Virus record (IMG/VR): IMGVR_UViG_3300044644_001125
Span: 186,001 to 250,000 of that record
DNA: 64,000 nt
Reading direction: 5' to 3' (one strand)
The number at the start of each line of letters is the position of its first letter. Position 1 is the first letter of the stretch. The notes beneath the pieces are model-generated. The model was not told where the DNA came from. It made no database searches and saw only the letters and a list, made by a program, of their open reading frames with translations. A program made the translations under genes and the position numbers. Of this stretch, positions 54,530-64,000 are shown one piece after another.

Positions 54530-56107
54530 ATGATTGAACCGAGTAAAAACTTACAATCAATCTTTGAGGCAGCAACTGAGATTGCAAAAGAACACAGTCA
54601 TGAGTATATTACTCTTGAACATATTGCGTATGCAATCATGAGTGATCAAGATTCATATAACTTAATCGAAGGTTTTGGAGCAGATGCTAAGTTTATTAAA
54701 ATGAACTTAGATCACTATTTGAAAACCAATTTGGCTGAAATCGTAATCGATGATCCTAATCACGTACCACGTAAAACCAATTCGGTTGACCGTGTATTAC
54801 ATCGTTGCTTTACTCAAGTTGTATTCAGTGGTCGTAATACAACTGAAGTTACTGATGTTATCATTAGTATCTTAAGTGAAAAGAACAGTTTTGCTTACTA
54901 CTTCTTTAATCGTGGTGGTGTTTCTAAAGAAAAGTTTGCTAAACACTTTAATGCCAATCGTGAAGATGGTGACTTGGGTGATCAAGCAGTTGGTAGTGCG
55001 AAAAACCCAGATAAGTTATTGGATGCGTATTGCACTAACTTGAGTGCACTTGCTCGTGATAATAAAATCGATCCAGTTATCGGTCGTGAAACCGAGTTAG
55101 AAGAAATCCAATTGATTCTTGCTCGTAGACATAAGTGTAATGTACTTTTAACCGGTTCGCCAGGCACTGGTAAGACTCAAATTTTTTCTGGCCTAGCCCG
55201 TAAAATTCACGAGAAAGATGTACCTAAGTTTATTCAAGACCACGAAGTTTATTCGCTAGATATTAGTTCATTATTGGCTGGTACTAAGTATCGTGGTGAT
55301 TTTGAAGAACGCATCAAAGGTGTTCTTGCGGCATTAGAGAAAAAAGGTAAAGTAATCTTATTCATTGATGAAGCTCATATGATGCAAGGTGCTGGTGCTT
55401 CAAGTAATAGTGCAAATGACTTATCTAACATGCTGAAACCTTTATTAACTAAAGGTACAATTAAGATTGTTGCTTCTACTACATGGGAAGATTATCGTAA
55501 ACATTTTGAGAATGACCGTGCATTAATGCGTCGATTCCAAAGAGTTGCATTCGATGAACCATCACCAGAAATGGCAGTTAAAATCTTAAAAGGTATTCGT
55601 AAGTATTATGAAGCACATCATAATGTGAAAATTACCAATGCTGCGATTGAACAAGCTGTTAAGTTATCGGTTAAGTACATCAATGACAAGCATCTACCAG
55701 ATAAAGCAATTGACATTATCGATTGTGCATCTGCTCGTTATAAATTGAATGATGATCCAACAACTGAGGGTGTAACTCAAATTGTTGATGTTGAGCAGAT
55801 TTCATTTGAGATTTCTAAGATGCTTGGTATGCCACTCGAAGCAATGACACAGCGTGAAAGTGCTAATATGATGGAACTTGAATCTGTGATGAAAGCCTCG
55901 ATCTTTAATCAAGATAAGGCTATCGATCAATTAGTTGATAAAATCTTCTTATCGCAGGCTGGAATGAAAGCACCTAACAAACCAATTGGTTCATTTTTAC
56001 TAACTGGATCCAGCGGAACTGGAAAATGTCTGGAAAAACAACAACTTATAACAGTGCGGATGAATCCAGACATGCACCGTTTTGCTAAAGCACGTAACCT
56101 AATTTAG
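54530..56107 (+). CDS. clpA: ClpA-like ATPase N-half (499 aa) plus 26-aa split-intein N-fragment
   Basis: Clp_N, DPVIGRE, GSPGTGKT, LFIDEAH, AL.RRF, LPDKAID, GSSGTGK|CLEKQQL...NLI*. Confidence 0.92.
   Translation: MIEPSKNLQSIFEAATEIAKEHSHEYITLEHIAYAIMSDQDSYNLIEGFGADAKFIKMNLDHYLKTNLAEIVIDDPNHVPRKTNSVDRVLHRCFTQVVFSGRNTTEVTDVIISILSEKNSFAYYFFNRGGVSKEKFAKHFNANREDGDLGDQAVGSAKNPDKLLDAYCTNLSALARDNKIDPVIGRETELEEIQLILARRHKCNVLLTGSPGTGKTQIFSGLARKIHEKDVPKFIQDHEVYSLDISSLLAGTKYRGDFEERIKGVLAALEKKGKVILFIDEAHMMQGAGASSNSANDLSNMLKPLLTKGTIKIVASTTWEDYRKHFENDRALMRRFQRVAFDEPSPEMAVKILKGIRKYYEAHHNVKITNAAIEQAVKLSVKYINDKHLPDKAIDIIDCASARYKLNDDPTTEGVTQIVDVEQISFEISKMLGMPLEAMTQRESANMMELESVMKASIFNQDKAIDQLVDKIFLSQAGMKAPNKPIGSFLLTGSSGTGKCLEKQQLITVRMNPDMHRFAKARNLI
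56027..56104 (+). mobile_element. split intein N-fragment (26 aa)
   Basis: Cys directly after the Walker A Lys, then stop at 56105-56107. Confidence 0.8.
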
Positions 56108-57236
56108 CAAAATCTTCAAGAATTACTCGTCTGGTTTCTTGAACACTAGACGAGTACATTTCATATACATACCAACCTTGCATTTCCGCGATTTCTTTTT
56201 TGTACATATCGAATTGATATTTCGCGTCTGCTGTTCTACCATCAAATACCTGACTCCAATTATCCCATTTTTCTTGGTCCCAAATGGGATTTGGGTGGAA
56301 ACATTCACCGTGGTATTCGATGATAATTGCTAATGATGGGATGGTTAAATCGTAGTAGAACCAACGCATTTCGTCTTCGTCAAATATAGCCCATTCTTGG
56401 TTTCCTTCAACCCCAATATAGTATGTTATCTCATACTTATCCAATAGATTTATTATATCCGAAAGAGCAACCAATGATTCGGCACTTGCAGATGATGAAT
56501 TTGTATTTTTACGCTTCCGATTGGCTCGCATATCATTGTATAATCTGGTTCCTTCCTCTATACCATGCTTTGCTATATAAGATTCCAGCGTTGGACTTCG
56601 TTTTTTATTGATTCCCGGTATAGATTCCATGTGGGTTGACCAGTTCTCGTTTCTTTCTTTAAACTTGATAGCACCGAGTTCCTCGCCGTATTTTTTCTGA
56701 TATGTTTCCAATGTATTGGTTGCTTGAACCTGACGCACCAATTCCTTTGCTTCTGCTTCGGTGTATCCTTTCTTAGTCCAATATTTTACATTACGTTGAG
56801 ACACATCATCTCGGCCTCTAGTTTTATCTGCTGATATCAGAGATTTTCTACGCTGAGTTTCACTGGAATGATCGAAGTGTGCAGTTTTCCTAGAGTTAGC
56901 ATCCAAATAAATTATAGTACCATGCATTACGCCATACATTGTTACGTGATAATTTAAGGAACCTATCTTGTACGTTTTTAAATCCAGCCATCTAGCAGCC
57001 CAACCAGATAATCCATACTTAATGAATTTAACAAATGTTTCTCGTCTATCGTTAGTGTATAAACCTTGTTTATCGATTTCTGAAATCTCTTCCAGTTCTG
57101 CTTCGGTTAATGGTCTATCACCAAATGCTTCCTTGTAAAATGGACTGTCCGTTATTCTTGCATGAATTGGTTTAATCAAATCTGGGTTGTATCGTCTTTT
57201 AGTTCTGGCGACAGGTGTTTCAATCGTAGTTTCCAT
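56085..57236 (-). CDS. Vsr-like/PD-(D/E)XK free-standing homing endonuclease
   Basis: Repeated Y..K.G.EEG modules; C-terminal FYYDL.I....IIEYHGECFH...D..K...A...G. Confidence 0.75.
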   Translation of the reverse strand: METTIETPVARTKRRYNPDLIKPIHARITDSPFYKEAFGDRPLTEAELEEISEIDKQGLYTNDRRETFVKFIKYGLSGWAARWLDLKTYKIGSLNYHVTMYGVMHGTIIYLDANSRKTAHFDHSSETQRRKSLISADKTRGRDDVSQRNVKYWTKKGYTEAEAKELVRQVQATNTLETYQKKYGEELGAIKFKERNENWSTHMESIPGINKKRSPTLESYIAKHGIEEGTRLYNDMRANRKRKNTNSSSASAESLVALSDIINLLDKYEITYYIGVEGNQEWAIFDEDEMRWFYYDLTIPSLAIIIEYHGECFHPNPIWDQEKWDNWSQVFDGRTADAKYQFDMYKKEIAEMQGWYVYEMYSSSVQETRRVILEDFAKLGYVL

Positions 57237-57339: not shown

Positions 57340-58578
57340 TTGATTACAGAAACACTACCAATTGGAAAAATGTTTGAGATATTGGAACAATATGAGAAAT
57401 TACGCTTCTCCCCAGATCGGGAACAGTTCCTTAATACTCCATTACAAATCCAAAACGAAAACGGCGAATGGATTGACATATCGGCCGCCATTACTAAAGA
57501 AGATACCGGTAGAGAAGTAAGATTCGATAACGGTGATTCGTTAAAAGCTGCTGATAGACATCGCATTTTTAACGGTGAAACCTGCATTTTCTTTGATTCA
57601 CTTAACGTAGGTGATTCTTTGAAAAAAGCTAACGGTGAAACCATCACAGTAACAGAAATTAACACAATCCCAGATACCCTATACTACGACCTTACAGTCG
57701 AGAGTGATACACATTTATACCAAACTGCTAATGGGATCGTCCATCATAACACGGAAACTTGTAGAAAACTAGCAGAAAAGATGCACATGCCATTAGTTCG
57801 TTTTGACATGAGTGAATACCAAGAGAAACACTCAGTGGCAAGATTGATTGGTTCACCTCCTGGTTATGTTGGATTTGAAGACAACGCAGGTCAGTTAATT
57901 ACTAAACTGCAAGAAAATCCACACTGTGTTCTGCTACTAGATGAAATCGAAAAAGCACATCCTGATGTAACAAATATCATGTTACAATTCATGGATAATG
58001 GATTTGTAACTGGTTCTAACGGTAAACAAGCAGATGGTCGTAACTGTATTCTTATTATGACGAGTAACTTGGGTGCTCGTGACAGTGAACGTAATACTAT
58101 CGGTTTTGGTGATTTAGCTAGAACTGGTGAAGATGATAAAGCAATTAACGAATACTTTGCACCTGAATTCCGCAATCGTTTAGATGCTATCATCAAGTTT
58201 GCTCCACTAGAACACAGCACAGTTCTTAAAATCGTGGATAAATTCATTGGTGAGTTAAACGCCCAGTTGAAAGACAAAGATATCTTAATTGAAATCGATG
58301 AAACTACTGCTGAATGGTTAGCTAAACTTGGTTACGATAAGAAAATGGGTGCTAGACCTCTTTCAAGAGTAATCGATACTAAACTGAAAAGTCCATTAAG
58401 TCGTCGTGTTTTATTTGGTGATTTGGTTAACGGTGGTCATGTTAAAGTTACTATTGAAAATGACGAACCCGTTTTCACAGTTTCTGAGTATGTTAAACCA
58501 GTAGTGGAATCAGATCAAAAACTGATCGTTGAAGATGGGCAATTGGTATTAGCTGATGATCACGCAGACGACAACTAA
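57340..58578 (+). CDS. clpA: split-intein C-fragment (137 aa) plus ClpA C-half (275 aa)
   Basis: AGGAG + TTG start; KAADRH (block B), YYDLTV..TH.Y.TANGIVHHN|TETCR; DMSEYQEKHSVARLIGSPPGYVG, LLLDEIEKAHP, PEFRNRLD, GARPL. Confidence 0.92.
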   Translation: MITETLPIGKMFEILEQYEKLRFSPDREQFLNTPLQIQNENGEWIDISAAITKEDTGREVRFDNGDSLKAADRHRIFNGETCIFFDSLNVGDSLKKANGETITVTEINTIPDTLYYDLTVESDTHLYQTANGIVHHNTETCRKLAEKMHMPLVRFDMSEYQEKHSVARLIGSPPGYVGFEDNAGQLITKLQENPHCVLLLDEIEKAHPDVTNIMLQFMDNGFVTGSNGKQADGRNCILIMTSNLGARDSERNTIGFGDLARTGEDDKAINEYFAPEFRNRLDAIIKFAPLEHSTVLKIVDKFIGELNAQLKDKDILIEIDETTAEWLAKLGYDKKMGARPLSRVIDTKLKSPLSRRVLFGDLVNGGHVKVTIENDEPVFTVSEYVKPVVESDQKLIVEDGQLVLADDHADDN

Positions 58579-59215: not shown

Positions 59216-59220
59216 CCCCA

Positions 59221-59249
59221 AAGGGTAGTACTCAGGTACTACCCTTTTT
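59221..59249 (+). terminator. Rho-independent terminator
   Basis: AAGGGTAGTAC-TCAG-GTACTACCCTTTTT. Confidence 0.85.
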
Positions 59250-59383
59250 CTTTATGGCTCGTGCCTATCGGCACTCGCTATCCAATATTAGAGTTAAACT
59301 TGTATATATCAATATATACGCATAATATGCGAGCTCCGCTAGGAGCGAGCCTAGAAATACCGAACTTTCAAGCTAAATACGGT

Positions 59384-59737
59384 ATGCAAAAAGAAAGTCA
59401 AATATTAATCTCTAACTACTCAAATGATTCGATGCCTACCGAATTTGCCTATACTTCTAAGCAAAAAGGTGCAGGTTATCAACATAATAACGATGGAAGT
59501 CATCTCGTTGTTTATCAATTTGACCAGTTTAAAGGTACAGTTAAAATCCAAGCAACCCTAGAGTTATATCCGGGTGAACAGGATTGGTTTGACGTGCCCG
59601 AAACAATCCTAGGCGGTGATAGTTCATACATATCCAGTGCAAATTCCTCATTCACATTCTGGGGTAAATTCATTTGGATTAGGGCTGCTTATCAACTAGA
59701 ACAAGGTACTATTGTACAAATCCGGTATCAGATTTAG
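59384..59737 (+). CDS. small beta-sandwich virion-type protein
   Basis: Late promoter at 59374, ATG 59384; G.V.IQATL...P...DWF...F.W.R. Confidence 0.65.
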   Translation: MQKESQILISNYSNDSMPTEFAYTSKQKGAGYQHNNDGSHLVVYQFDQFKGTVKIQATLELYPGEQDWFDVPETILGGDSSYISSANSSFTFWGKFIWIRAAYQLEQGTIVQIRYQI

Positions 59738-59758: not shown

Positions 59759-60607
59759 ATGCAATTACTAGAATTATTCGCATCGACCAAACGATTAACA
59801 GAAGACGCTAAGGAGTATTCTCCTATTGGTGCCCCATCAGAAGATGATTCGCAGGATATTGATTGGCTCGGTGACCTAAAGTTCTATATCGATAATGACG
59901 ATAAGTTACTGAATAACCACTTCTTTCCAGTTACCAAGAAACATCGCAAGTTTATTGGTAATCCAAATATCTATAAAATCTACATCAAACCTATATTAAC
60001 CAGTATTGACCAATACTGTGATCATTTTGATATTGAAGATCGAGATGAGAAATTCCCAGATTCTTTAATAAGAGAATTGGCAAGACACATCGCTGCTGAA
60101 CAAGAAGAGCATATTCATAATGGCGAGTATTTGAACTCAGTTAACACTGGTATTAAAGAAAGTGTAGAATTGCCTGGTAAAACCATAAGTGGTTCAATTC
60201 GTGAATTTAAGCATGGTGATACTAAAATCGCATATAGTCTACGCGATGATCATGTTGAGATATCATCTGTAAGAACACCACAAGCTAAAAGAGGTGCAGG
60301 TTCTGCTAGAGAAGCAATGTCTGAGTTTCTAAAAGCCACCGATAATGCAGGATTACCTACTAAATTGGCATCATCGCCATTAGATAACAAAACAAGTGGT
60401 AGTAAGCTAATTGCATTCTATAAATCACTTGGTTATAAGGAATCTGGTAATAAAATCAATGCGGTTGGTGATTTGGAATTAGTACGTCCGGTTGGTTCAA
60501 CTACTGAAGACGCGGCTGGTGTTGGTATTATTACCAAACAAAACTCAACAAAAGATGTTGGACCAGGCACTATTCGTAAAAACCTTAAGGCTTTTAAGTT
60601 GGTTTAA
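59759..60607 (+). CDS. modular head-type protein with internal GNAT-like domain
   Basis: MQLLELF..LTE leader; ISSVRTP..KRGAGSA...KLIAFYKSLGY. Confidence 0.6.
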   Translation: MQLLELFASTKRLTEDAKEYSPIGAPSEDDSQDIDWLGDLKFYIDNDDKLLNNHFFPVTKKHRKFIGNPNIYKIYIKPILTSIDQYCDHFDIEDRDEKFPDSLIRELARHIAAEQEEHIHNGEYLNSVNTGIKESVELPGKTISGSIREFKHGDTKIAYSLRDDHVEISSVRTPQAKRGAGSAREAMSEFLKATDNAGLPTKLASSPLDNKTSGSKLIAFYKSLGYKESGNKINAVGDLELVRPVGSTTEDAAGVGIITKQNSTKDVGPGTIRKNLKAFKLV

Positions 60608-60608
60608 T

Positions 60609-61229
60609 ATGCTACTTTTAGAATTGTTTAATGTCCGTGAAATGTCACAGATCATCGATCCAGTGACTCCAAAGATAGCAAGCCAAGCCGATAACTCGAT
60701 GTTCGCAAAATACAGACGTTTTTGCGAGCCAGTAGAGAAACTATCCGATACGATTACCTTGTACTACGGTGAAGGTAATACAAGAAATGTTTACATGGCA
60801 GCTAAAAGCGAAGGCGTTGAAGGTGATGAGAAAGTCGTTTACTTAATGGAATTTGAACGAGATTCAAATAGACTATTAGGTGAATTTGCTATCCAACGTT
60901 GGTTATGGATGGATAAAGCGTATAAAGGCGAACTTGGTAATCTTCCAACTCGCATGTTTAATGAACTTATAGACGATTACTTTACGGTTATTGCTGATTC
61001 AGAACAAACACCCGATGGTAAAAAGTTCTGGATGCGACAACTACATGCAGCATTTGGTAGTGGTTTAAATGTCTACTATGCCGATTTAAACAAAAATGTA
61101 TTAAAGCAATTACAGAAACCCGGTGATATTAGTCGTTATGACTTTGCTTATGGTGTTTGGACCAGAGCAGAATCTTCACTTGAAAAGGTTTTTGTTATTT
61201 CAAGCAAAAAACTGAGAGTGACGAAATGA
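60609..61229 (+). CDS. hypothetical protein with MLLLELF leader, possibly degenerate GNAT-like
   Basis: ATG 60609; DSEQTPDGKKFW. Confidence 0.6.
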   Translation: MLLLELFNVREMSQIIDPVTPKIASQADNSMFAKYRRFCEPVEKLSDTITLYYGEGNTRNVYMAAKSEGVEGDEKVVYLMEFERDSNRLLGEFAIQRWLWMDKAYKGELGNLPTRMFNELIDDYFTVIADSEQTPDGKKFWMRQLHAAFGSGLNVYYADLNKNVLKQLQKPGDISRYDFAYGVWTRAESSLEKVFVISSKKLRVTK

Positions 61230-61909
61230 ACATGAGAGATATACTAGATAAACTAGATTTGATTGAAGCTGTCGAAGATACTGATGTTGAGCCAAAAGAT
61301 AATGTACAAAACCCAGAACAACAAAATAGATTGGCACCTAACGGAAAACCAAGCAACTTAAATCCAGTTCAATACCAGCAGGTAAGAACACCTGAATTTA
61401 AGGCATGGTTTGGTGATTGGGAAAATAGCCCACAGTCTGCGAGTAAAGTCGTTGATGAGAATGGCGAACCTATGATAATGTATACTGGAACATCCAGTGA
61501 TAAGGATTTTGATAAATTCAAAACTCCAAAGAATGGTGTATGGTTCAGTAAATCAAGAGAATCCGCCGCAAATTATGCAATGCAGAATGATAGCCAAGAT
61601 GTAAAATATAACCCGAATACTGGAAAATATGATAACATCAATACTGCTAGTAGAGTAATACCGGTGTTCATAAATATTAAAACGCCACATACATCGACCA
61701 AATCCGACTTTGACAGAGTGAATGTTTCTAATTACAAAGCTGCTCAGGCAAAATTATTCAATGAGTTTCGTCAAGTAGGTTATGATGGTGTTCAATGGAA
61801 TTCATCAGATTGGGTGGCTATTGCCAATGCCAATCAATTCAAGTCTGCTATTGGTAATGCCGGATCTTTTAGCCAGAAATCCAGTAAAATTCACGAGAAA
61901 TTGCAATGA
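61226..61909 (+). CDS. ADP-ribosyltransferase-like (ART-PolyVal-type) protein 1
   Basis: VRTPEFKAWFGDW..SKVVDENGEPMIMYTGT; G.WFS; PVFINIK.P; GYDGV; NQFKSAIGN.G.FS. Confidence 0.7.
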   Translation: MNMRDILDKLDLIEAVEDTDVEPKDNVQNPEQQNRLAPNGKPSNLNPVQYQQVRTPEFKAWFGDWENSPQSASKVVDENGEPMIMYTGTSSDKDFDKFKTPKNGVWFSKSRESAANYAMQNDSQDVKYNPNTGKYDNINTASRVIPVFINIKTPHTSTKSDFDRVNVSNYKAAQAKLFNEFRQVGYDGVQWNSSDWVAIANANQFKSAIGNAGSFSQKSSKIHEKLQ

Positions 61910-62604
61910 ACATGAGAGATATCCTTGACAAGTTAAAACTGGTTGAATCTGAAGAACCCACCGCAGATACTACACAAGAACCAGTAAAACCAGAAACTAA
62001 AAGAAAATCGTTGGCCAAAGAACATGGTGAAGTATTCTCAATCGATGATGCTGTAATTGATGTCGATTTTAAAGCAGAATTTGCACCTAGACCACAATCA
62101 GTTATCGAATTCTACGTTCCAAAAGAATTACGTGGGCAAGGTATTGGTACCAAACTATTACAAATGGCTGTTTCCAAGTATCCAATGCTTGGTGGTCAAG
62201 TTAGTTCAATGGCTTCATTGAAGGTATTTTACAACTTAGATTTTAGAAATCCAAGTATTCCTAAAGGATCGATTCAAGATCATGTGGATATTATGAATGA
62301 TTATAGTTCAGTGTATATGGCACATACCGATGATAAAGGTGTACCGTACAGTAAACTTAAAACTGAATCAGTTGATATTAGAACTTTAGTTGATACTATT
62401 GATAAACTAGAATCAGAAATTCTAGCTGAAAAGTCTTTGAGTAAAGCACAACAACGGTTGTTTGGTGCGGTTAAACATGCCCAAGAAACTGGTGATGCAT
62501 CCAGTCCTAAAATAGCAAAGATGGCTAAGTCGATTAGTAAATCAGATGTTAAAGACTTTGCTAGCACTAAGCATAAAGGCCTACCTGAGAAAAAGAAGAA
62601 ATAG
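61906..62604 (+). CDS. GNAT-like domain fused to a DUF3008-like basic tail
   Basis: FYVPKELRGQGIGTKLL; KAQQRLFGA...MAKS.SK.DVKDFASTKHKGLPEKK. Confidence 0.7.
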   Translation: MNMRDILDKLKLVESEEPTADTTQEPVKPETKRKSLAKEHGEVFSIDDAVIDVDFKAEFAPRPQSVIEFYVPKELRGQGIGTKLLQMAVSKYPMLGGQVSSMASLKVFYNLDFRNPSIPKGSIQDHVDIMNDYSSVYMAHTDDKGVPYSKLKTESVDIRTLVDTIDKLESEILAEKSLSKAQQRLFGAVKHAQETGDASSPKIAKMAKSISKSDVKDFASTKHKGLPEKKKK

Positions 62605-62605
62605 T

Positions 62606-63418
62606 ATGGAAATCCGTTATCTTTTAGATAAGTTGAAGTTGATTGAGTCTGAGGTGGAACAGCCAAAAGATGATGAAGTTCAAGAACCCGTTAAGGCAGA
62701 ACCAGTCAAGCAAGAACCTCAAAAGGTTGATAAACCAGAACAACGATTGGCACCAAATGGAAAACCTTCCAAATTAAATGCTGGTCAATACCGCATGGTA
62801 AGAACCCCTGAATTCAAAGCATGGTTTGGTGATTGGGAACACGATGAACATAAGTATCAATCTAGTGAAATCGTTGGCGCGAATGAAGAACCATTAGTAT
62901 GCTATCGAGGCAACGTCGAAGATTTTGGTGATACATTCTCTTATGATAAGCAAAACCTAACACATAAATCAGTAAGTAATACATTTGGATTTTTCTTTAG
63001 TACAGACTCGAGCGATGCCACTCATTACACAGGTGACACGGGTAATACACAAGCCGTATTTTTAAATATAAGAAATCCATTAAGATTACGGCAAAAATAC
63101 ATTTCTGATATGGACGAGTTTGTTAAATTAATGAAAACCGCTAATGTGTCATTATCATCTGATACATTGGATAGTATCGTCAATTATTTGAATGGCATCC
63201 GTTCCTCATTTGATTTGCATGACACCCACAAATACTTAACCGGTGGTGGTTCATTACTACGTAATGATTTAATATCAGCTGGCTATGATGGTATGATGTT
63301 CCTCGAAAATAAACATGAAGGTGCAATCGTCGTTGCATTCAACCCAAACCAAGTTAAATCTGCGATTGGTAATGTAGGATTCAGTACCAAATCTGACAAA
63401 ATGCACGAGGAACTCTAA
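62606..63418 (+). CDS. ART-PolyVal-type protein 2
   Basis: ATG 62606; VRTPEFKAWFGDW, EPLVCYRG, GFFFS, VFLNIRNP, GYDG, AFNPNQVKSAIGN. Confidence 0.72.
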   Translation: MEIRYLLDKLKLIESEVEQPKDDEVQEPVKAEPVKQEPQKVDKPEQRLAPNGKPSKLNAGQYRMVRTPEFKAWFGDWEHDEHKYQSSEIVGANEEPLVCYRGNVEDFGDTFSYDKQNLTHKSVSNTFGFFFSTDSSDATHYTGDTGNTQAVFLNIRNPLRLRQKYISDMDEFVKLMKTANVSLSSDTLDSIVNYLNGIRSSFDLHDTHKYLTGGGSLLRNDLISAGYDGMMFLENKHEGAIVVAFNPNQVKSAIGNVGFSTKSDKMHEEL

Positions 63419-64000
63419 TGGAAATCCGTTATCTTTTAGACAAATTAAAGTTACTTGAATCTGAGCAATTACTAGCACCAAATGGAAAGCCAAGTAATTT
63501 GAATCCGGTTCAATACCAACAAGTAAGAACACCTGCTTTTAAAGCATGGTTTGGTGACAGTAAAGTAGTTGATGAAAACGGTGAACCCTTGGTTGTATAT
63601 CACGCAACTAATGCTGATTTTACTGAATTTGATACTAATTTAGGAAGCGGAGTAGCAGGTAAAGGTACTTACGTTACTTCAATAAAACCATCTAATGACA
63701 ACTATGGGAATTATGTAATGCCATTGTTTGTTAGTATTCGCAATCCTATCGACTTTTCAAGTGGTGATAAGGCAATAAACGATAAAGCTGAAGATTTAGG
63801 ATTGGAAGGATTATTCGAATTGTCAAGCCTAGCACAAATTGACAAGTGGAGTGGCGAGTTAAAACAAAAACTGCAACAAGAAGGATACGATGGTGCTGAA
63901 TTAAAGGGTGATGGTAATGCTAGATATTTCGTAGCATATAACTCGAATCAAATTAAATCTGCCATTGGTAATACCGGATCTTTCAGTCAGCAATCAAACA
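63418..64000 (+). CDS. ART-PolyVal-type protein 3, 3'-truncated by the window
   Basis: MEIRYLLDKLKLLESE...VRTPAFKAWFGDSKVVDENGEPLVVYHAT...GYDG..VAYNSNQIKSAIGN; not in the ORF track. Confidence 0.72.
   Translation, partial: MEIRYLLDKLKLLESEQLLAPNGKPSNLNPVQYQQVRTPAFKAWFGDSKVVDENGEPLVVYHATNADFTEFDTNLGSGVAGKGTYVTSIKPSNDNYGNYVMPLFVSIRNPIDFSSGDKAINDKAEDLGLEGLFELSSLAQIDKWSGELKQKLQQEGYDGAELKGDGNARYFVAYNSNQIKSAIGNTGSFSQQSN

What the first reader, a model, noticed from the sequence alone, without database searches (positions are those of the whole stretch)
59759..64000. Cluster of ART-like and GNAT effectors with shared capsid-processing-type leaders
Seen: six adjacent genes with related N-termini: MQLLELF..LTE, MLLLELF..RE, MNMRDILDKLDLIE, MNMRDILDKLKLVE, MEIRYLLDKLKLIE, MEIRYLLDKLKLLE. 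These are joined to three ART-PolyVal-like domains, GNAT-like domains and a DUF3008-like tail, and modules are separated by further x-x-E sites. Established: the T4 prohead protease cleaves after L/I-x-E, and T4 injects the ADP-ribosyltransferase Alt. Inference: a swappable leader that loads host-modifying enzymes into the head for ejection.
Basis: partly seen in the sequence, partly recalled or inferred. Interest (0 to 1): 0.65.

Follow-up and report, generated by a model that had tools for sequence, protein, structure and literature searches.

The report
Leader-tagged enzyme cassettes of a jumbo phage
A giant freshwater phage carries a row of ADP-ribosyltransferase and acetyltransferase genes that all begin with the same short peptide, which looks like the phage T4 tag that loads proteins into the head and is then cut off; the tag also marks where genes are swapped between related phages.

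Summary
The window is part of a 327-kb uncultured freshwater jumbo phage of the RaK2/GAP32/PA5oct group, with a T4-type head module that includes a gp21-like protease.

**What the cluster holds**
- It is one likely late operon of 11 genes. It starts at window 59384 and runs 2.7 kb past the window end.
- There are four ART-PolyVal genes, three GNAT-fold genes, one DUF3008 tail and three small or unknown proteins.
- Ten of the 11 genes start with a short peptide. Most of these peptides end in [I/L/V]-x-E, the T4 prohead-protease site.

**Evidence that the leaders are real signals**
- The D-K-L leader occurs only in this cluster.
- A second leader type (M-R-I-x-E-h-h-x-E) heads about 14 more genes elsewhere in the genome, most behind the late-promoter-like motif. 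Its best-annotated cargoes are a kinase-like protein, DUF6321 and GP88.
- The leaders resemble the cleaved N-termini of T4 gp24, Alt and the internal proteins.
- Orthologues keep full leader copies as linkers between fused domains.
- Metagenome contigs show genes deleted or exchanged exactly at leader and module borders.

Swappability is shown. Head loading and cleavage are well-founded inference with no proteomic test. This is a new variant of a known kind: the T4 capsid-targeting system combined with "unbundled" polyvalent-protein effectors.

The parts
59220..59247 (+). Intrinsic-terminator-like hairpin with a T run. It closes the upstream unit.
   Evidence: 12-bp stem, 5 GC pairs. No strong + strand terminator (stem of 8 or more pairs) follows until L001 5443-5462; two weak 6-pair hits lie between, at L001 2581-2596 and 3466-3480.
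59373..59380 (+). Late-promoter-like motif CTAAATAC, 3 nt before the ATG of g0.
   Evidence: The motif [AC]TAAATAC occurs 56 times in the genome, 39 of them within 100 nt upstream of a start. It precedes the scaffold, tail sheath, head-tail adaptor and virion structural genes.
59384..59737 (+). g0: 117 aa, first gene of the unit, no leader, function unknown.
   Evidence: only phrog_13657, unknown function. An RNA-library contig covers 59427-59753.
59759..60607 (+). g1, 282 aa. It consists of a leader (residues 1-15, ends L-T-E), a helical domain X (about 36-120), a mini-GNAT (about 141-242, motif A near 177-187) and a conserved 33-aa C-terminal tail (250-282; 60506-60604).
   Evidence: best match AcrVA5 6iuf, E 3e-5, TM-target 0.68, then GNATs. 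The tail is shared at 80-97% identity with proteins carrying NMNAT-, ParB- or deaminase-type domains. An in-frame variant without residues 130-249 exists (P0129).
60609..61229 (+). g2, 206 aa: leader (residues 1-11, ends V-R-E) plus a divergent GNAT-fold domain.
   Evidence: There are 221 relatives, and a family-wide conserved N-terminus M-[KR]-h-x-[ED]-h-L-x-E-[STM]-P. In the model, residues 1-14 are disordered and the rest has pLDDT above 90.
61226..61909 (+). g3, 227 aa. It consists of a leader (residues 1-14, 61226-61267), an acidic linker, the conserved LAPNGKPSNL..FKAWFGDW module (36-65), an ART-PolyVal domain and a tail ending ..IHEKLQ. The strand-1 His is replaced by Thr.
   Evidence: The whole gene is absent from one RNA-library contig, through a joint at 61224>61905.
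61906..62604 (+). g4, 232 aa. It consists of a leader (residues 1-14), a GNAT (motif A at 75-85), a decayed internal leader (156-171; 62371-62418) and a basic DUF3008 tail (176-232).
62606..63418 (+). g5, 270 aa: leader, Pro/Glu-rich linker, conserved N-module (48-77) and an ART-PolyVal domain. The strand-1 His is replaced by Arg.
63418..64000 (+). g6, 200 aa, ending 20 nt past the window: leader, N-module (19-47) and an ART-PolyVal domain with Y-H-A-T. The core at 63557-63955 is an exchangeable cassette.

Best explanation
The cluster is a late-expressed, hypervariable locus of internal head proteins in a T4-related jumbo phage.

**Proposed mechanism**
- Each gene encodes a short N-terminal address peptide of 9-15 residues. 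It is an amphipathic helix that in most genes ends in [I/L/V]-x-E.
- The peptide brings the protein into the scaffolding core while the prohead assembles.
- The gp21-type prohead protease then cuts after the Glu, both at the N-terminus and at internal leader copies in fused genes.
- The freed cargo stays in the head and enters the host with the DNA.

**Cargo**
- The cargo is the set of domains otherwise found strung together in giant "polyvalent proteins": ART-PolyVal ADP-ribosyltransferases, GNAT acetyltransferases and a basic DUF3008 module.
- Here the domains are unbundled into separate tagged genes, presumably to modify host proteins or defences at the first moment of infection.

**Role of the DNA**
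- The DNA encoding the leaders, the conserved N-module and the C-tails doubles as homology for recombination, so cargoes are gained, lost and exchanged as cassettes.

**Status of each step**
- Shown: the leaders, the domains, the protease gene, the shared promoter-like motif and recombination at module borders.
- Inferred: core targeting, cleavage, ejection and enzymatic activity.
For: 1. **T4-type head module.** Peptidase_S77 scores 4e-24. A scaffold and a Gp23-family capsid protein follow (8e-97). The capsid protein's Pfam match starts at residue 53, behind a Q-L-S-E site.
2. **Leader similarity to known cleaved peptides.** T4 gp24 starts MAKINELLRE|S and T4 Alt starts MELITELFDE. The T4 IP capsid-targeting sequence MKTYQEFIAE is cut once and carries foreign proteins into heads (PMC8442874; PMC5694885). 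The leaders here include MRISELITE|S, MRIEEILSE|V and MRLHELFEE|A.
3. **Leader distribution.** Leaders are confined to true starts (17/939 against 2/1618, p = 3e-6). Their codons differ, so selection acts on the peptide. In the models they lie outside the folded domains.
4. **Late context.** The unit lies behind a terminator and the [AC]TAAATAC motif shared with sheath, adaptor, scaffold and structural genes. Eleven of 19 pattern-matching starts have the motif within 60 nt.
5. **Other head-assembly motifs in the cluster only.** [ILMV]-[RK]-x-L-A-G-[LIQ] occurs genome-wide only at the scaffold C-terminus, in g8 and in g10. G-[AT]-T-S-[AG]-[AG] occurs only in the capsid N-arm and in g9. The Vibrio phage scaffold ends in a like way.
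6. **Leader as a cleavable linker.** P0006 and P0007 have full internal copies between GNAT and DUF3008 and between GNAT and ART.
7. **Cargo type.** ART-PolyVal and its neighbouring GNAT are the commonest protein-modifying domains of polyvalent proteins, which are predicted to be packaged and injected. The prototype is fused to an N4-type virion RNA polymerase (PMC5512222).
8. **Cassette behaviour.**
9. **Room in the virion.** PA5oct, a phage of the same group, has 93 virion-associated proteins (PMC7318152).
Against: - There is no virion proteome for this phage or for any phage that carries these leaders. Nothing directly shows packaging or cleavage.
- The nearest cultured relatives with annotated genomes lack the M-R-I leader. 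These are PA5oct, which also has virion MS data, and Vibrio phage 2.275.O. The syntenic PA5oct region holds tail-fibre-like genes instead.
- In related contigs the same leader types sit on NMNAT-like, ligase-like and nucleotidase-like enzymes. These are not classic virion proteins.
- [ILV]-x-E is a common tripeptide. The g9 leader ends F-E-E, and g8 has no such site near its start.
- The strand-1 His of the ART is replaced in g3 (Thr) and g5 (Arg), so not all copies need be active enzymes.
- RNA-library contigs cannot prove transcription or its timing.
Confidence: 0.6

Rival explanations
1. The leaders, and the g1 C-terminal tail, are address or docking tags for something other than the capsid. 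Candidates are assembly into a cytoplasmic enzyme complex, recognition by the phage's own ClpA/B-like unfoldase encoded just upstream, membrane or secretion targeting, or control of stability. The proteins would act from within the infected cell late in infection.
For: - In relatives the same leader types head NMNAT-like, ligase-like and HAD-nucleotidase-like enzymes. The g1 tail ends proteins with NMNAT, ParB and deaminase domains.
- A ClpA/B-like gene lies 1.2 kb upstream.
- No proteomic evidence for packaging exists.
Against: - The leaders resemble three different T4 peptides that are known to be cut off inside the prohead.
- They share the late structural-gene motif.
- Scaffold- and capsid-like motifs occur in the same operon only.
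- The cargo domains are those of injected polyvalent proteins.
- Nothing resembles a signal peptide or a known degron.
Confidence: 0.2
2. The repeated 5' ends are kept mainly as DNA: short homology boxes that let cassettes recombine. The peptide itself would have no targeting role.
For: - There are joints exactly at leader or module borders. The g3 deletion lies within the 17-18 nt shared by g3 and g4. The g6 core is replaced between conserved flanks. Back-joints occur between ART paralogues.
- The g5-g7 leaders are nearly identical at the DNA level.
Against: - M-R-I-type leaders scattered over the genome use different codons for the same residues.
- The g2 family keeps the peptide pattern across 221 relatives at 25-50% identity.
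- Internal copies are kept in frame as linkers.
- This rival is compatible with the best explanation rather than opposed to it.
Confidence: 0.1
3. The shared N-termini are only a trace of tandem duplication of one ancestral gene and have no function of their own.
For: Four ART genes in a row are clear paralogues at 42-53% identity. Several of them also share C-terminal endings (..HE-x-L).
Against: - The same leader heads unrelated cargo: ART, GNAT+DUF3008, the 487-aa g10, and proteins of 375 to 1420 aa in other phages.
- The same GNAT cargo has different leaders elsewhere.
- The leader is better conserved than the linker that follows it.
Confidence: 0.05

Closest known systems
Phage T4 internal proteins IPI, IPII, IPIII and their capsid-targeting sequence (CTS); T-even IP loci
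   Same: - A short N-terminal peptide ends in I/L-x-E, directs a non-essential protein into the scaffolding core and is removed by the gp21 protease (PMC8442874, PMC5694885).
- The leader is shared by several adjacent genes with unrelated cargo.
- From my own knowledge (Repoila et al. 1994; Comeau and Krisch), the locus varies between related phages while the leader is kept.
   Different: - The cargo here is enzymes with recognisable folds (ART, GNAT), not small basic proteins of unknown fold. Only the DUF3008 tail is IP-like.
- There are at least two leader families of 9-15 residues, and about 25 tagged genes spread over the genome.
- Internal leader copies serve as linkers.
- The host phage is a 327-kb jumbo phage with a 389-aa capsid protein.
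Phage T4 Alt (packaged, injected ADP-ribosyltransferase)
   Same: - It is an ADP-ribosyltransferase that is made late, carried in the head, trimmed by gp21 and injected (PMC5512222).
- Its N-terminus MELITELFDE is close to the M-x-L-x-E-L-F leaders of g1, g2 and g9.
   Different: - Alt belongs to the R-S-E (Alt/VIP2) clade and has 682 aa.
- The ARTs here belong to the H-Y-D ART-PolyVal clade, have 200-270 aa, are present in four copies and carry the other (D-K-L) leader.
Polyvalent proteins of phages and conjugative elements (Iyer et al. 2017, PMC5512222)
   Same: - The domain repertoire is the same: ART-PolyVal, an adjoining GNAT, and possibly a kinase and a metallopeptidase (weak matches).
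- The predicted role is the same: effectors delivered with the DNA.
- phrog_30335 and phrog_21376, profiles of giant proteins, match g3, g5 and g6 including the N-module.
   Different: - Polyvalent proteins are single polypeptides of 2-15 domains.
- Here each domain is its own gene with its own leader. Relatives hold two- or three-domain fusions joined by leader copies (P0006, P0007). That suggests a route between solo genes and polyproteins through protease-cleavable linkers.
Ejection and inner-body proteins of phiKZ, 201phi2-1 and SPN3US
   Same: These are many head-internal proteins of a jumbo phage, processed by a T4-related prohead protease after x-x-E. Their propeptides are thought to target them to the prohead (PMC5694885).
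   Different: - Those phages cut after A/S/G-x-E.
- Their propeptides are mostly 80-130 residues long.
- Their cargo is largely of unknown function or consists of virion RNA polymerase subunits.
AcrVA5 (phage anti-CRISPR mini-GNAT)
   Same: It is the best structural match of the g1 acetyltransferase module (6iuf, E 3e-5, about 95 residues, 22-24% identity). Both are phage-encoded minimal GNATs.
   Different: - AcrVA5 is a free early protein that acetylates Cas12a.
- The g1 module is inserted between a helical domain and a conserved tail in a leader-tagged late protein.
- No target is known, and the fold match says nothing about substrate.
Encapsulin cargo-loading peptides (analogy only, from my own knowledge)
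   Same: A short conserved terminal peptide on varied enzymes addresses them to the inside of an HK97-fold shell. The 33-aa tail of g1 is shared by enzymes of unrelated families.
   Different: There is no sequence similarity and no test made here. The role of the g1 tail is unknown.

Membership tests
T4-type CTS-bearing internal head proteins | Short N-terminal propeptide ending in (L/I)-x-E | tested here: met
   g1 L-T-E15, g2 V-R-E11, g3 L-I-E14, g4 L-V-E14, g5 L-I-E14, g6 L-L-E14, g7 L-L-E14, g10 A-I-E12. M-R-I type: I-T-E9, L-S-E9, V-T-E9. g9 (F-E-E) and g8 do not fit.
T4-type CTS-bearing internal head proteins | The phage encodes a gp21-type (Peptidase_S77) prohead protease within a T4-like head module | tested here: met
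   PF03420 scores 82.7 bits (cut-off 27) at genome 1415-1846. An acidic core protein, a scaffold and a Gp23-family capsid gene lie around it.
T4-type CTS-bearing internal head proteins | Late expression together with the head genes | tested here: inconclusive
   The promoter-like motif is shared with structural genes, and RNA-library contigs cover parts of the operon. No timed transcript data exist.
T4-type CTS-bearing internal head proteins | Protein present in the mature head with the leader removed | not testable with these tools
   The phage is uncultured and no proteome exists. The protease-leader complex prediction gave no answer.
T4-type CTS-bearing internal head proteins | Leader kept while the cargo varies between related phages | tested here: met
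   and the loci L016-L019, L023 and L061.
ART-PolyVal (PF18760) | Match to the family profile above the curated cut-off (31.2 bits) | tested here: met
   g3 59.2, g5 63.0, g6 90.8 and g7 42.8 bits.
ART-PolyVal (PF18760) | Active-site H (strand 1), Y (strand 2), D (strand 5) (PMC5512222) | tested here: inconclusive
   From alignment A1. His is present in g6 (Y-H-A-T) and g7 (H-H-G-T) but is Thr in g3 and Arg in g5. The Y-D-G Asp is invariant. The strand-2 aromatic residue is Y, F or W. The assignment of strands rests on motif likeness, not on a structure.
GNAT acetyltransferases | Profile match above the cut-off, or a GNAT fold with acetyl-CoA motif A (R/Q-x-x-G-x-G/A) | tested here: met
   - g4: motif A R-G-Q-G-I-G. 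Pfam scores are below cut-off, but homologues carry PF13508/PF00583.
- g1: R-G-A-G-S-A, with a fold match to AcrVA5 and GNATs (model pLDDT only 61).
- g2: fold only, Z 6.5-8.2 over about 120 residues, with no clear motif A. g2 is GNAT-like, and membership is not proven.
DUF3008 (PF11450) | Match above the curated cut-off (24 bits) | tested here: met
   30.4 bits, g4 residues 179-230. Hundreds of homologues are 63-69% identical.
Polyvalent proteins (Iyer et al. 2017) | Two to fifteen effector domains in one polypeptide | tested here: not met
   g3 and g5-g7 have one catalytic domain each, and g1 and g4 have two modules. Only the relatives P0006 and P0007 are small multi-domain fusions. The cluster works like a polyvalent protein cut into genes but is not a member.

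The most novel reading that the evidence does not exclude
T4-related phages of lakes and seas may share a small code of terminal address peptides:
- N-terminal leaders of the M-R-I-x-E-L and M-K-D-I-L-x-K-L-x-x-L-E types;
- an R-x-K-x-L-A-G-L motif borrowed from the scaffold C-terminus;
- a capsid N-arm mimic;
- a 33-aa C-terminal tail.

This code would load an exchangeable arsenal into the capsid, much as encapsulins load cargo. The arsenal would include ADP-ribosyltransferases, acetyltransferases, possibly kinases, and even NAD-salvage and nucleotide enzymes.

Leader copies would then be the protease-cleavable joints from which giant polyvalent proteins are built and taken apart.
Probability: 0.25. 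Interest if true: 0.85.

Novelty: new variant of a known kind. Interest (0 to 1): 0.65.

Why it matters
If the leaders load cargo into the head, several things follow.
- **Effector discovery.** They give a sequence-only way to read out which proteins an uncultured jumbo phage injects. That would yield a ready list of candidate host-takeover and anti-defence effectors: four ARTs, three GNAT folds, and kinase- and peptidase-like proteins.
- **Two fields joined.** The classical T4 capsid-targeting system and the computationally predicted polyvalent proteins would be linked, with a simple evolutionary route between solo effectors and polyproteins.
- **Engineering.** The leaders would be new short tags for packaging foreign proteins into phage heads.
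- **Phage evolution.** They would be a natural example of cassette exchange guided by a coding leader.

If the leaders address something else, the widespread conserved termini on unrelated enzymes are still an unexplained sorting signal.

Tried and rejected
- **Nearest phages, DNA level.** Megablast of the cluster against 50,697 phage records found no match.
- **Protein-level searches of cultured phages.**
  - g10 and g1 found only short partial hits.
  - Leader proteins from the uncultured T4-like contigs gave one no match and one a single short partial hit.
  - The NMNAT-type protein that carries the g1 tail found only the enzyme domain, never the tail.
- **Synteny with PA5oct,** which has virion MS data. 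The region before its dsbA-like and DNA polymerase genes holds tail-fibre-like proteins without leaders, so it is not informative.
- **M-R-I leader in relatives.** The DNA pattern was absent from PA5oct and Vibrio phage 2.275.O.
- **T4 late promoter.** TATAAATA is not used (7 sites against about 56 expected over the two strands).
- **A second Gp23-like (gp24-type vertex) gene** that might carry the leader was not found.
- **Complex prediction** of the prohead protease with the first 45 residues of g4 returned "no answer" (score 0.00). This is neither support nor evidence against.
- **Pfam scan of ten large leader-bearing proteins** from other contigs found no family.
- **Atlas search for g10** gave only low scores.
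- **Literature search** for DUF3008 and for six motif strings found no paper.
- **The 140-aa ORF behind the TnpB gene.** I first took it for an ART fragment. At 17% identity and with no Pfam hit, I dropped that reading.
- **Limit of the word search.** The search for homologous proteins sees only proteins of 0.55-1.75 times the query length, so longer fusions of these modules may have been missed.

Full report
**Where the window lies.** The window is bases 186001-250000 of a single 327,256-bp virus record (IMG/VR, CheckV about 92% complete).
- Its major capsid protein is 65-68% identical to those of Vibrio phage 2.275.O, GAP32, CBB, PA5oct and other RaK2-like jumbo phages.
- Words of the cluster occur in lake and freshwater metagenomes from 17 studies.
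- At genome 557-4269 lies a T4-type head module: an acidic core protein, a Peptidase_S77 (gp21-like) protease (82.7 bits), a coiled-coil scaffold and a 389-aa Gp23-family capsid protein. The capsid Pfam match begins at residue 53, behind the sequence Q-L-S-E|S-A-T-A-G-A-T-S-A-G.

**The observation.**
- ART-PolyVal is significant in g3, g5 and g6, and DUF3008 is significant in the tail of g4.
- The GNAT calls are below Pfam thresholds but stand on other evidence.
  - For g4: motif A, plus close stand-alone homologues that carry PF13508/PF00583.
  - For g1: a mini-GNAT whose best structural match is the anti-CRISPR acetyltransferase AcrVA5, followed by dozens of GNATs (model confidence is modest).
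  - For g2: a high-confidence model (pLDDT 89) that matches only GNAT folds, Z up to 8.2.
- The cluster goes on beyond the window:
  - g7, a fourth ART-PolyVal gene with the same leader (L001 20-775);
  - g8, 70 aa;
  - g9, 82 aa;
  - g10, 487 aa, which starts M-K-D-I-L-D-K-L-D-A-I-E.
- A 2.28-kb insertion carrying a TnpB gene follows. It is absent from a near-identical contig.

**One late operon.**
- A strong terminator (59220-59247) precedes the unit, and no strong + strand terminator follows until after the dsbA-like gene.
- At 59373-59380, 3 nt before the ATG of a leaderless first gene g0, lies CTAAATAC.
- The motif [AC]TAAATAC occurs 56 times in the genome, 39 of them just upstream of starts. 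It precedes the scaffold, tail sheath, head-tail adaptor, tail-spike-like and virion structural genes.
- The genes are packed start-on-stop. The conserved ART endings (..H-E-E-L) encode the GAGGA ribosome site of the next gene.
- Contigs from an RNA library cover parts of g0, g1, g2, g4, g5 and g6. This fits transcription but does not prove it.

**The leaders are a genome-wide system.**
- The D-K-L leader is found in six genes, all in the cluster.
- A looser search found a second family, M-R-I-x-E-h-h-x-E. It heads about 14 further genes elsewhere in the genome as well as g1, g2 and g9.
- It hits 17 of 939 first ATGs against 2 of 1618 later ATGs (p = 3e-6).
- Eleven of the 19 pattern-matching starts have the late motif within 60 nt.
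- Codons differ between copies, so the peptide is what is conserved.
- Cargoes with annotation:
  - Above or near threshold: a T7 gp0.7-like kinase, GP88, DUF6321 and L5_gp82.
  - Weak, below Pfam cut-offs, leads only: a putative metallopeptidase and DUF3990.
- In both structure models the leader lies outside the fold.

**Likeness to known cleaved peptides.**
- I read the T4 sequences from the T4 record. gp24 begins MAKINELLRE|S and Alt begins MELITELFDE.
- The IP capsid-targeting sequence is MKTYQEFIAE. It is cut once by gp21 and is able to carry foreign proteins into the head (PMC8442874; PMC5694885).
- The phage's M-R-I-S-E-L-I-T-E|S and M-R-L-H-E-L-F-E-E|A are close to these.
- The predicted capsid site L-S-E is the same tripeptide that ends several M-R-I leaders.

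**Further head-assembly motifs in the operon.**
- [ILMV]-[RK]-x-L-A-G-[LIQ] occurs in the whole genome only at the C-terminus of the scaffold, at the start of g8 and after the leader of g10.
- G-[AT]-T-S-[AG]-[AG] occurs only in the capsid N-arm and right after the g9 leader.
- The Vibrio phage scaffold ends with the same kind of motif.
- In uncultured T4-like contigs, large proteins with the M-K-D-I-L-x-K-L-x-x-L-E leader, encoded between the terminase genes, end in ..K-L-A-G-L.
- I read these as scaffold and capsid mimicry used for co-assembly. This is inference.

**Modularity and exchange.**
- The orthologue P0006 has a full leader copy between its GNAT and DUF3008 parts. P0007 is leader-GNAT-leader-ART. 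Stand-alone homologues of the same GNAT start M-K-I-Q-E-I-I-N-E.
- The g2 family keeps its leader pattern across 221 relatives.
- The 33-aa tail of g1 ends proteins with NMNAT, ParB or deaminase domains.
- Against the near-identical contig L017, identity is 98.6% up to 63557 and 97.5% from 63955 on. The ART core of g6 between these points is replaced.
- Metagenome contigs show three kinds of event:
  - loss of g3 through the 17-18 nt shared by the g3 and g4 leaders;
  - an in-frame g1 without its GNAT module, from codon 130 to the first codon of the tail;
  - back-joints between ART paralogues.

**Interpretation.**
- The best reading is a T4-style internal-protein locus whose cargo is the effector set of polyvalent proteins (PMC5512222), split into tagged genes.
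- Swappability is shown. Targeting, cleavage, ejection and activity are inferred.
- Two ART copies lack the strand-1 His.
- Cargoes such as NMNAT in relatives keep open a rival reading in which the tags address something other than the capsid.
- Nothing here required a step to be referred.

Noticed in passing
window 54530-56107 (+), 56085-57236 (-), 57340-58578 (+): A ClpA/B-like ATPase is split into two ORFs (Clp_N, AAA, AAA_lid_9 | AAA_2, ClpB_D2-small).
- The first half runs from the second G-T-G-K straight into C-L-E-K...
- The second half starts with about 130 extra residues ending ..H-H-N before T-E-T.
- This looks like the two halves of a split intein, with a 383-aa ORF, probably a free-standing endonuclease (no Pfam hit), on the opposite strand between them.
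- It resembles the "fractured genes" known from metagenomes (my own knowledge).
   Followed up: partly
L001 5935-8106, 8114-9844, 9851-10837 (genome 255935-260837): The family B DNA polymerase is split in the same way.
- The N-part ends ..Y-N-D-T-D followed by intein-like S-L-E-S-G-S.., and the C-part has ..V-H-N before S-V-Y-F.
- A 576-aa endonuclease-like ORF lies between them.
- The PA5oct record annotates the same layout, with a "Hef-like homing endonuclease".
   Followed up: partly
genome 75000-100300, minus strand (L008-L010): About 40 copies of a roughly 33-nt element (..ACCCACCTTAACAAAGCACTACGGAGTAAA, then ATG after about 5 nt) lie in front of small genes of 60-300 aa. It is probably an early promoter plus a shared 5' leader and ribosome site.
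   Followed up: partly
L001 2761-5039 (genome 252761-255039): A 2278-bp insertion lies between g10 and the dsbA-like gene. It carries a TnpB/Cas12f-like gene (OrfB_IS605 plus the Cas12f1-like TNB domain). It is absent from the 97-98% identical contig L017. A second TnpB-like ORF starts at genome 173779 (minus strand) behind the late motif.
   Followed up: partly
genome-wide; examples at genome 1972, 24379, 41571, 245373: The late-promoter-like motif [AC]TAAATAC replaces the T4 TATAAATA, which is under-represented (7 sites against about 56 expected over the two strands). It often sits only 3-5 nt before the ATG, which implies leaderless or very short 5' ends for some late mRNAs.
   Followed up: partly
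genome 48949, 70975, 72026, 112424, 112494, 114341, 115150, 125802, 144846, 152224, 163030, 304514, 322574, 326727 (outside the window): Fourteen further genes carry the M-R-I-x-E-h-h-x-E leader.
- Matches above or near threshold: a T7 gp0.7-like kinase (phrog_15752), GP88, DUF6321 and L5_gp82.
- Weak matches below Pfam cut-offs: a metallopeptidase-like protein and a DUF3990 protein.
- Three to four sit back to back at genome 111.7-115.2 kb.
   Followed up: partly
L001 775-987 (g8), 984-1232 (g9), 1250-2713 (g10); L005 2000-3088, 3100-4269: g8 and g10 carry the R-x-x-L-A-G motif of the scaffold C-terminus. After its leader, g9 repeats the A-G-A-T-S-A-G stretch of the capsid N-arm. A related contig has the g9 stretch internally, behind L-D-E (L018).
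   Followed up: partly
window 60506-60604 (g1 residues 250-282): A 33-aa C-terminal tail (..A-A-G-V-G-I-I-T-K-Q-N..K-A-F-K-L) is shared at 80-97% identity by uncultured-phage proteins with NMNAT, ParB, deaminase and other domains. Most of those checked begin M-[KLF]-L-[RL]-E-L-F-E or a close variant. It occurs once in this genome. Its function is unknown, and no paper mentions it.
   Followed up: partly
window 61331-61420, 62747-62836, 63472-63558: A 30-aa module (L-A-P-N-G-K-P-S-N-L ... F-K-A-W-F-G-D-W) precedes every ART-PolyVal domain here.
- It is better conserved than the catalytic core.
- It lies outside the Pfam model.
- It also occurs in DarB-like and methyltransferase-annotated giant proteins of Pseudoalteromonas and Shewanella phages.
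- It is the left border of the exchangeable ART cassette.
   Followed up: partly
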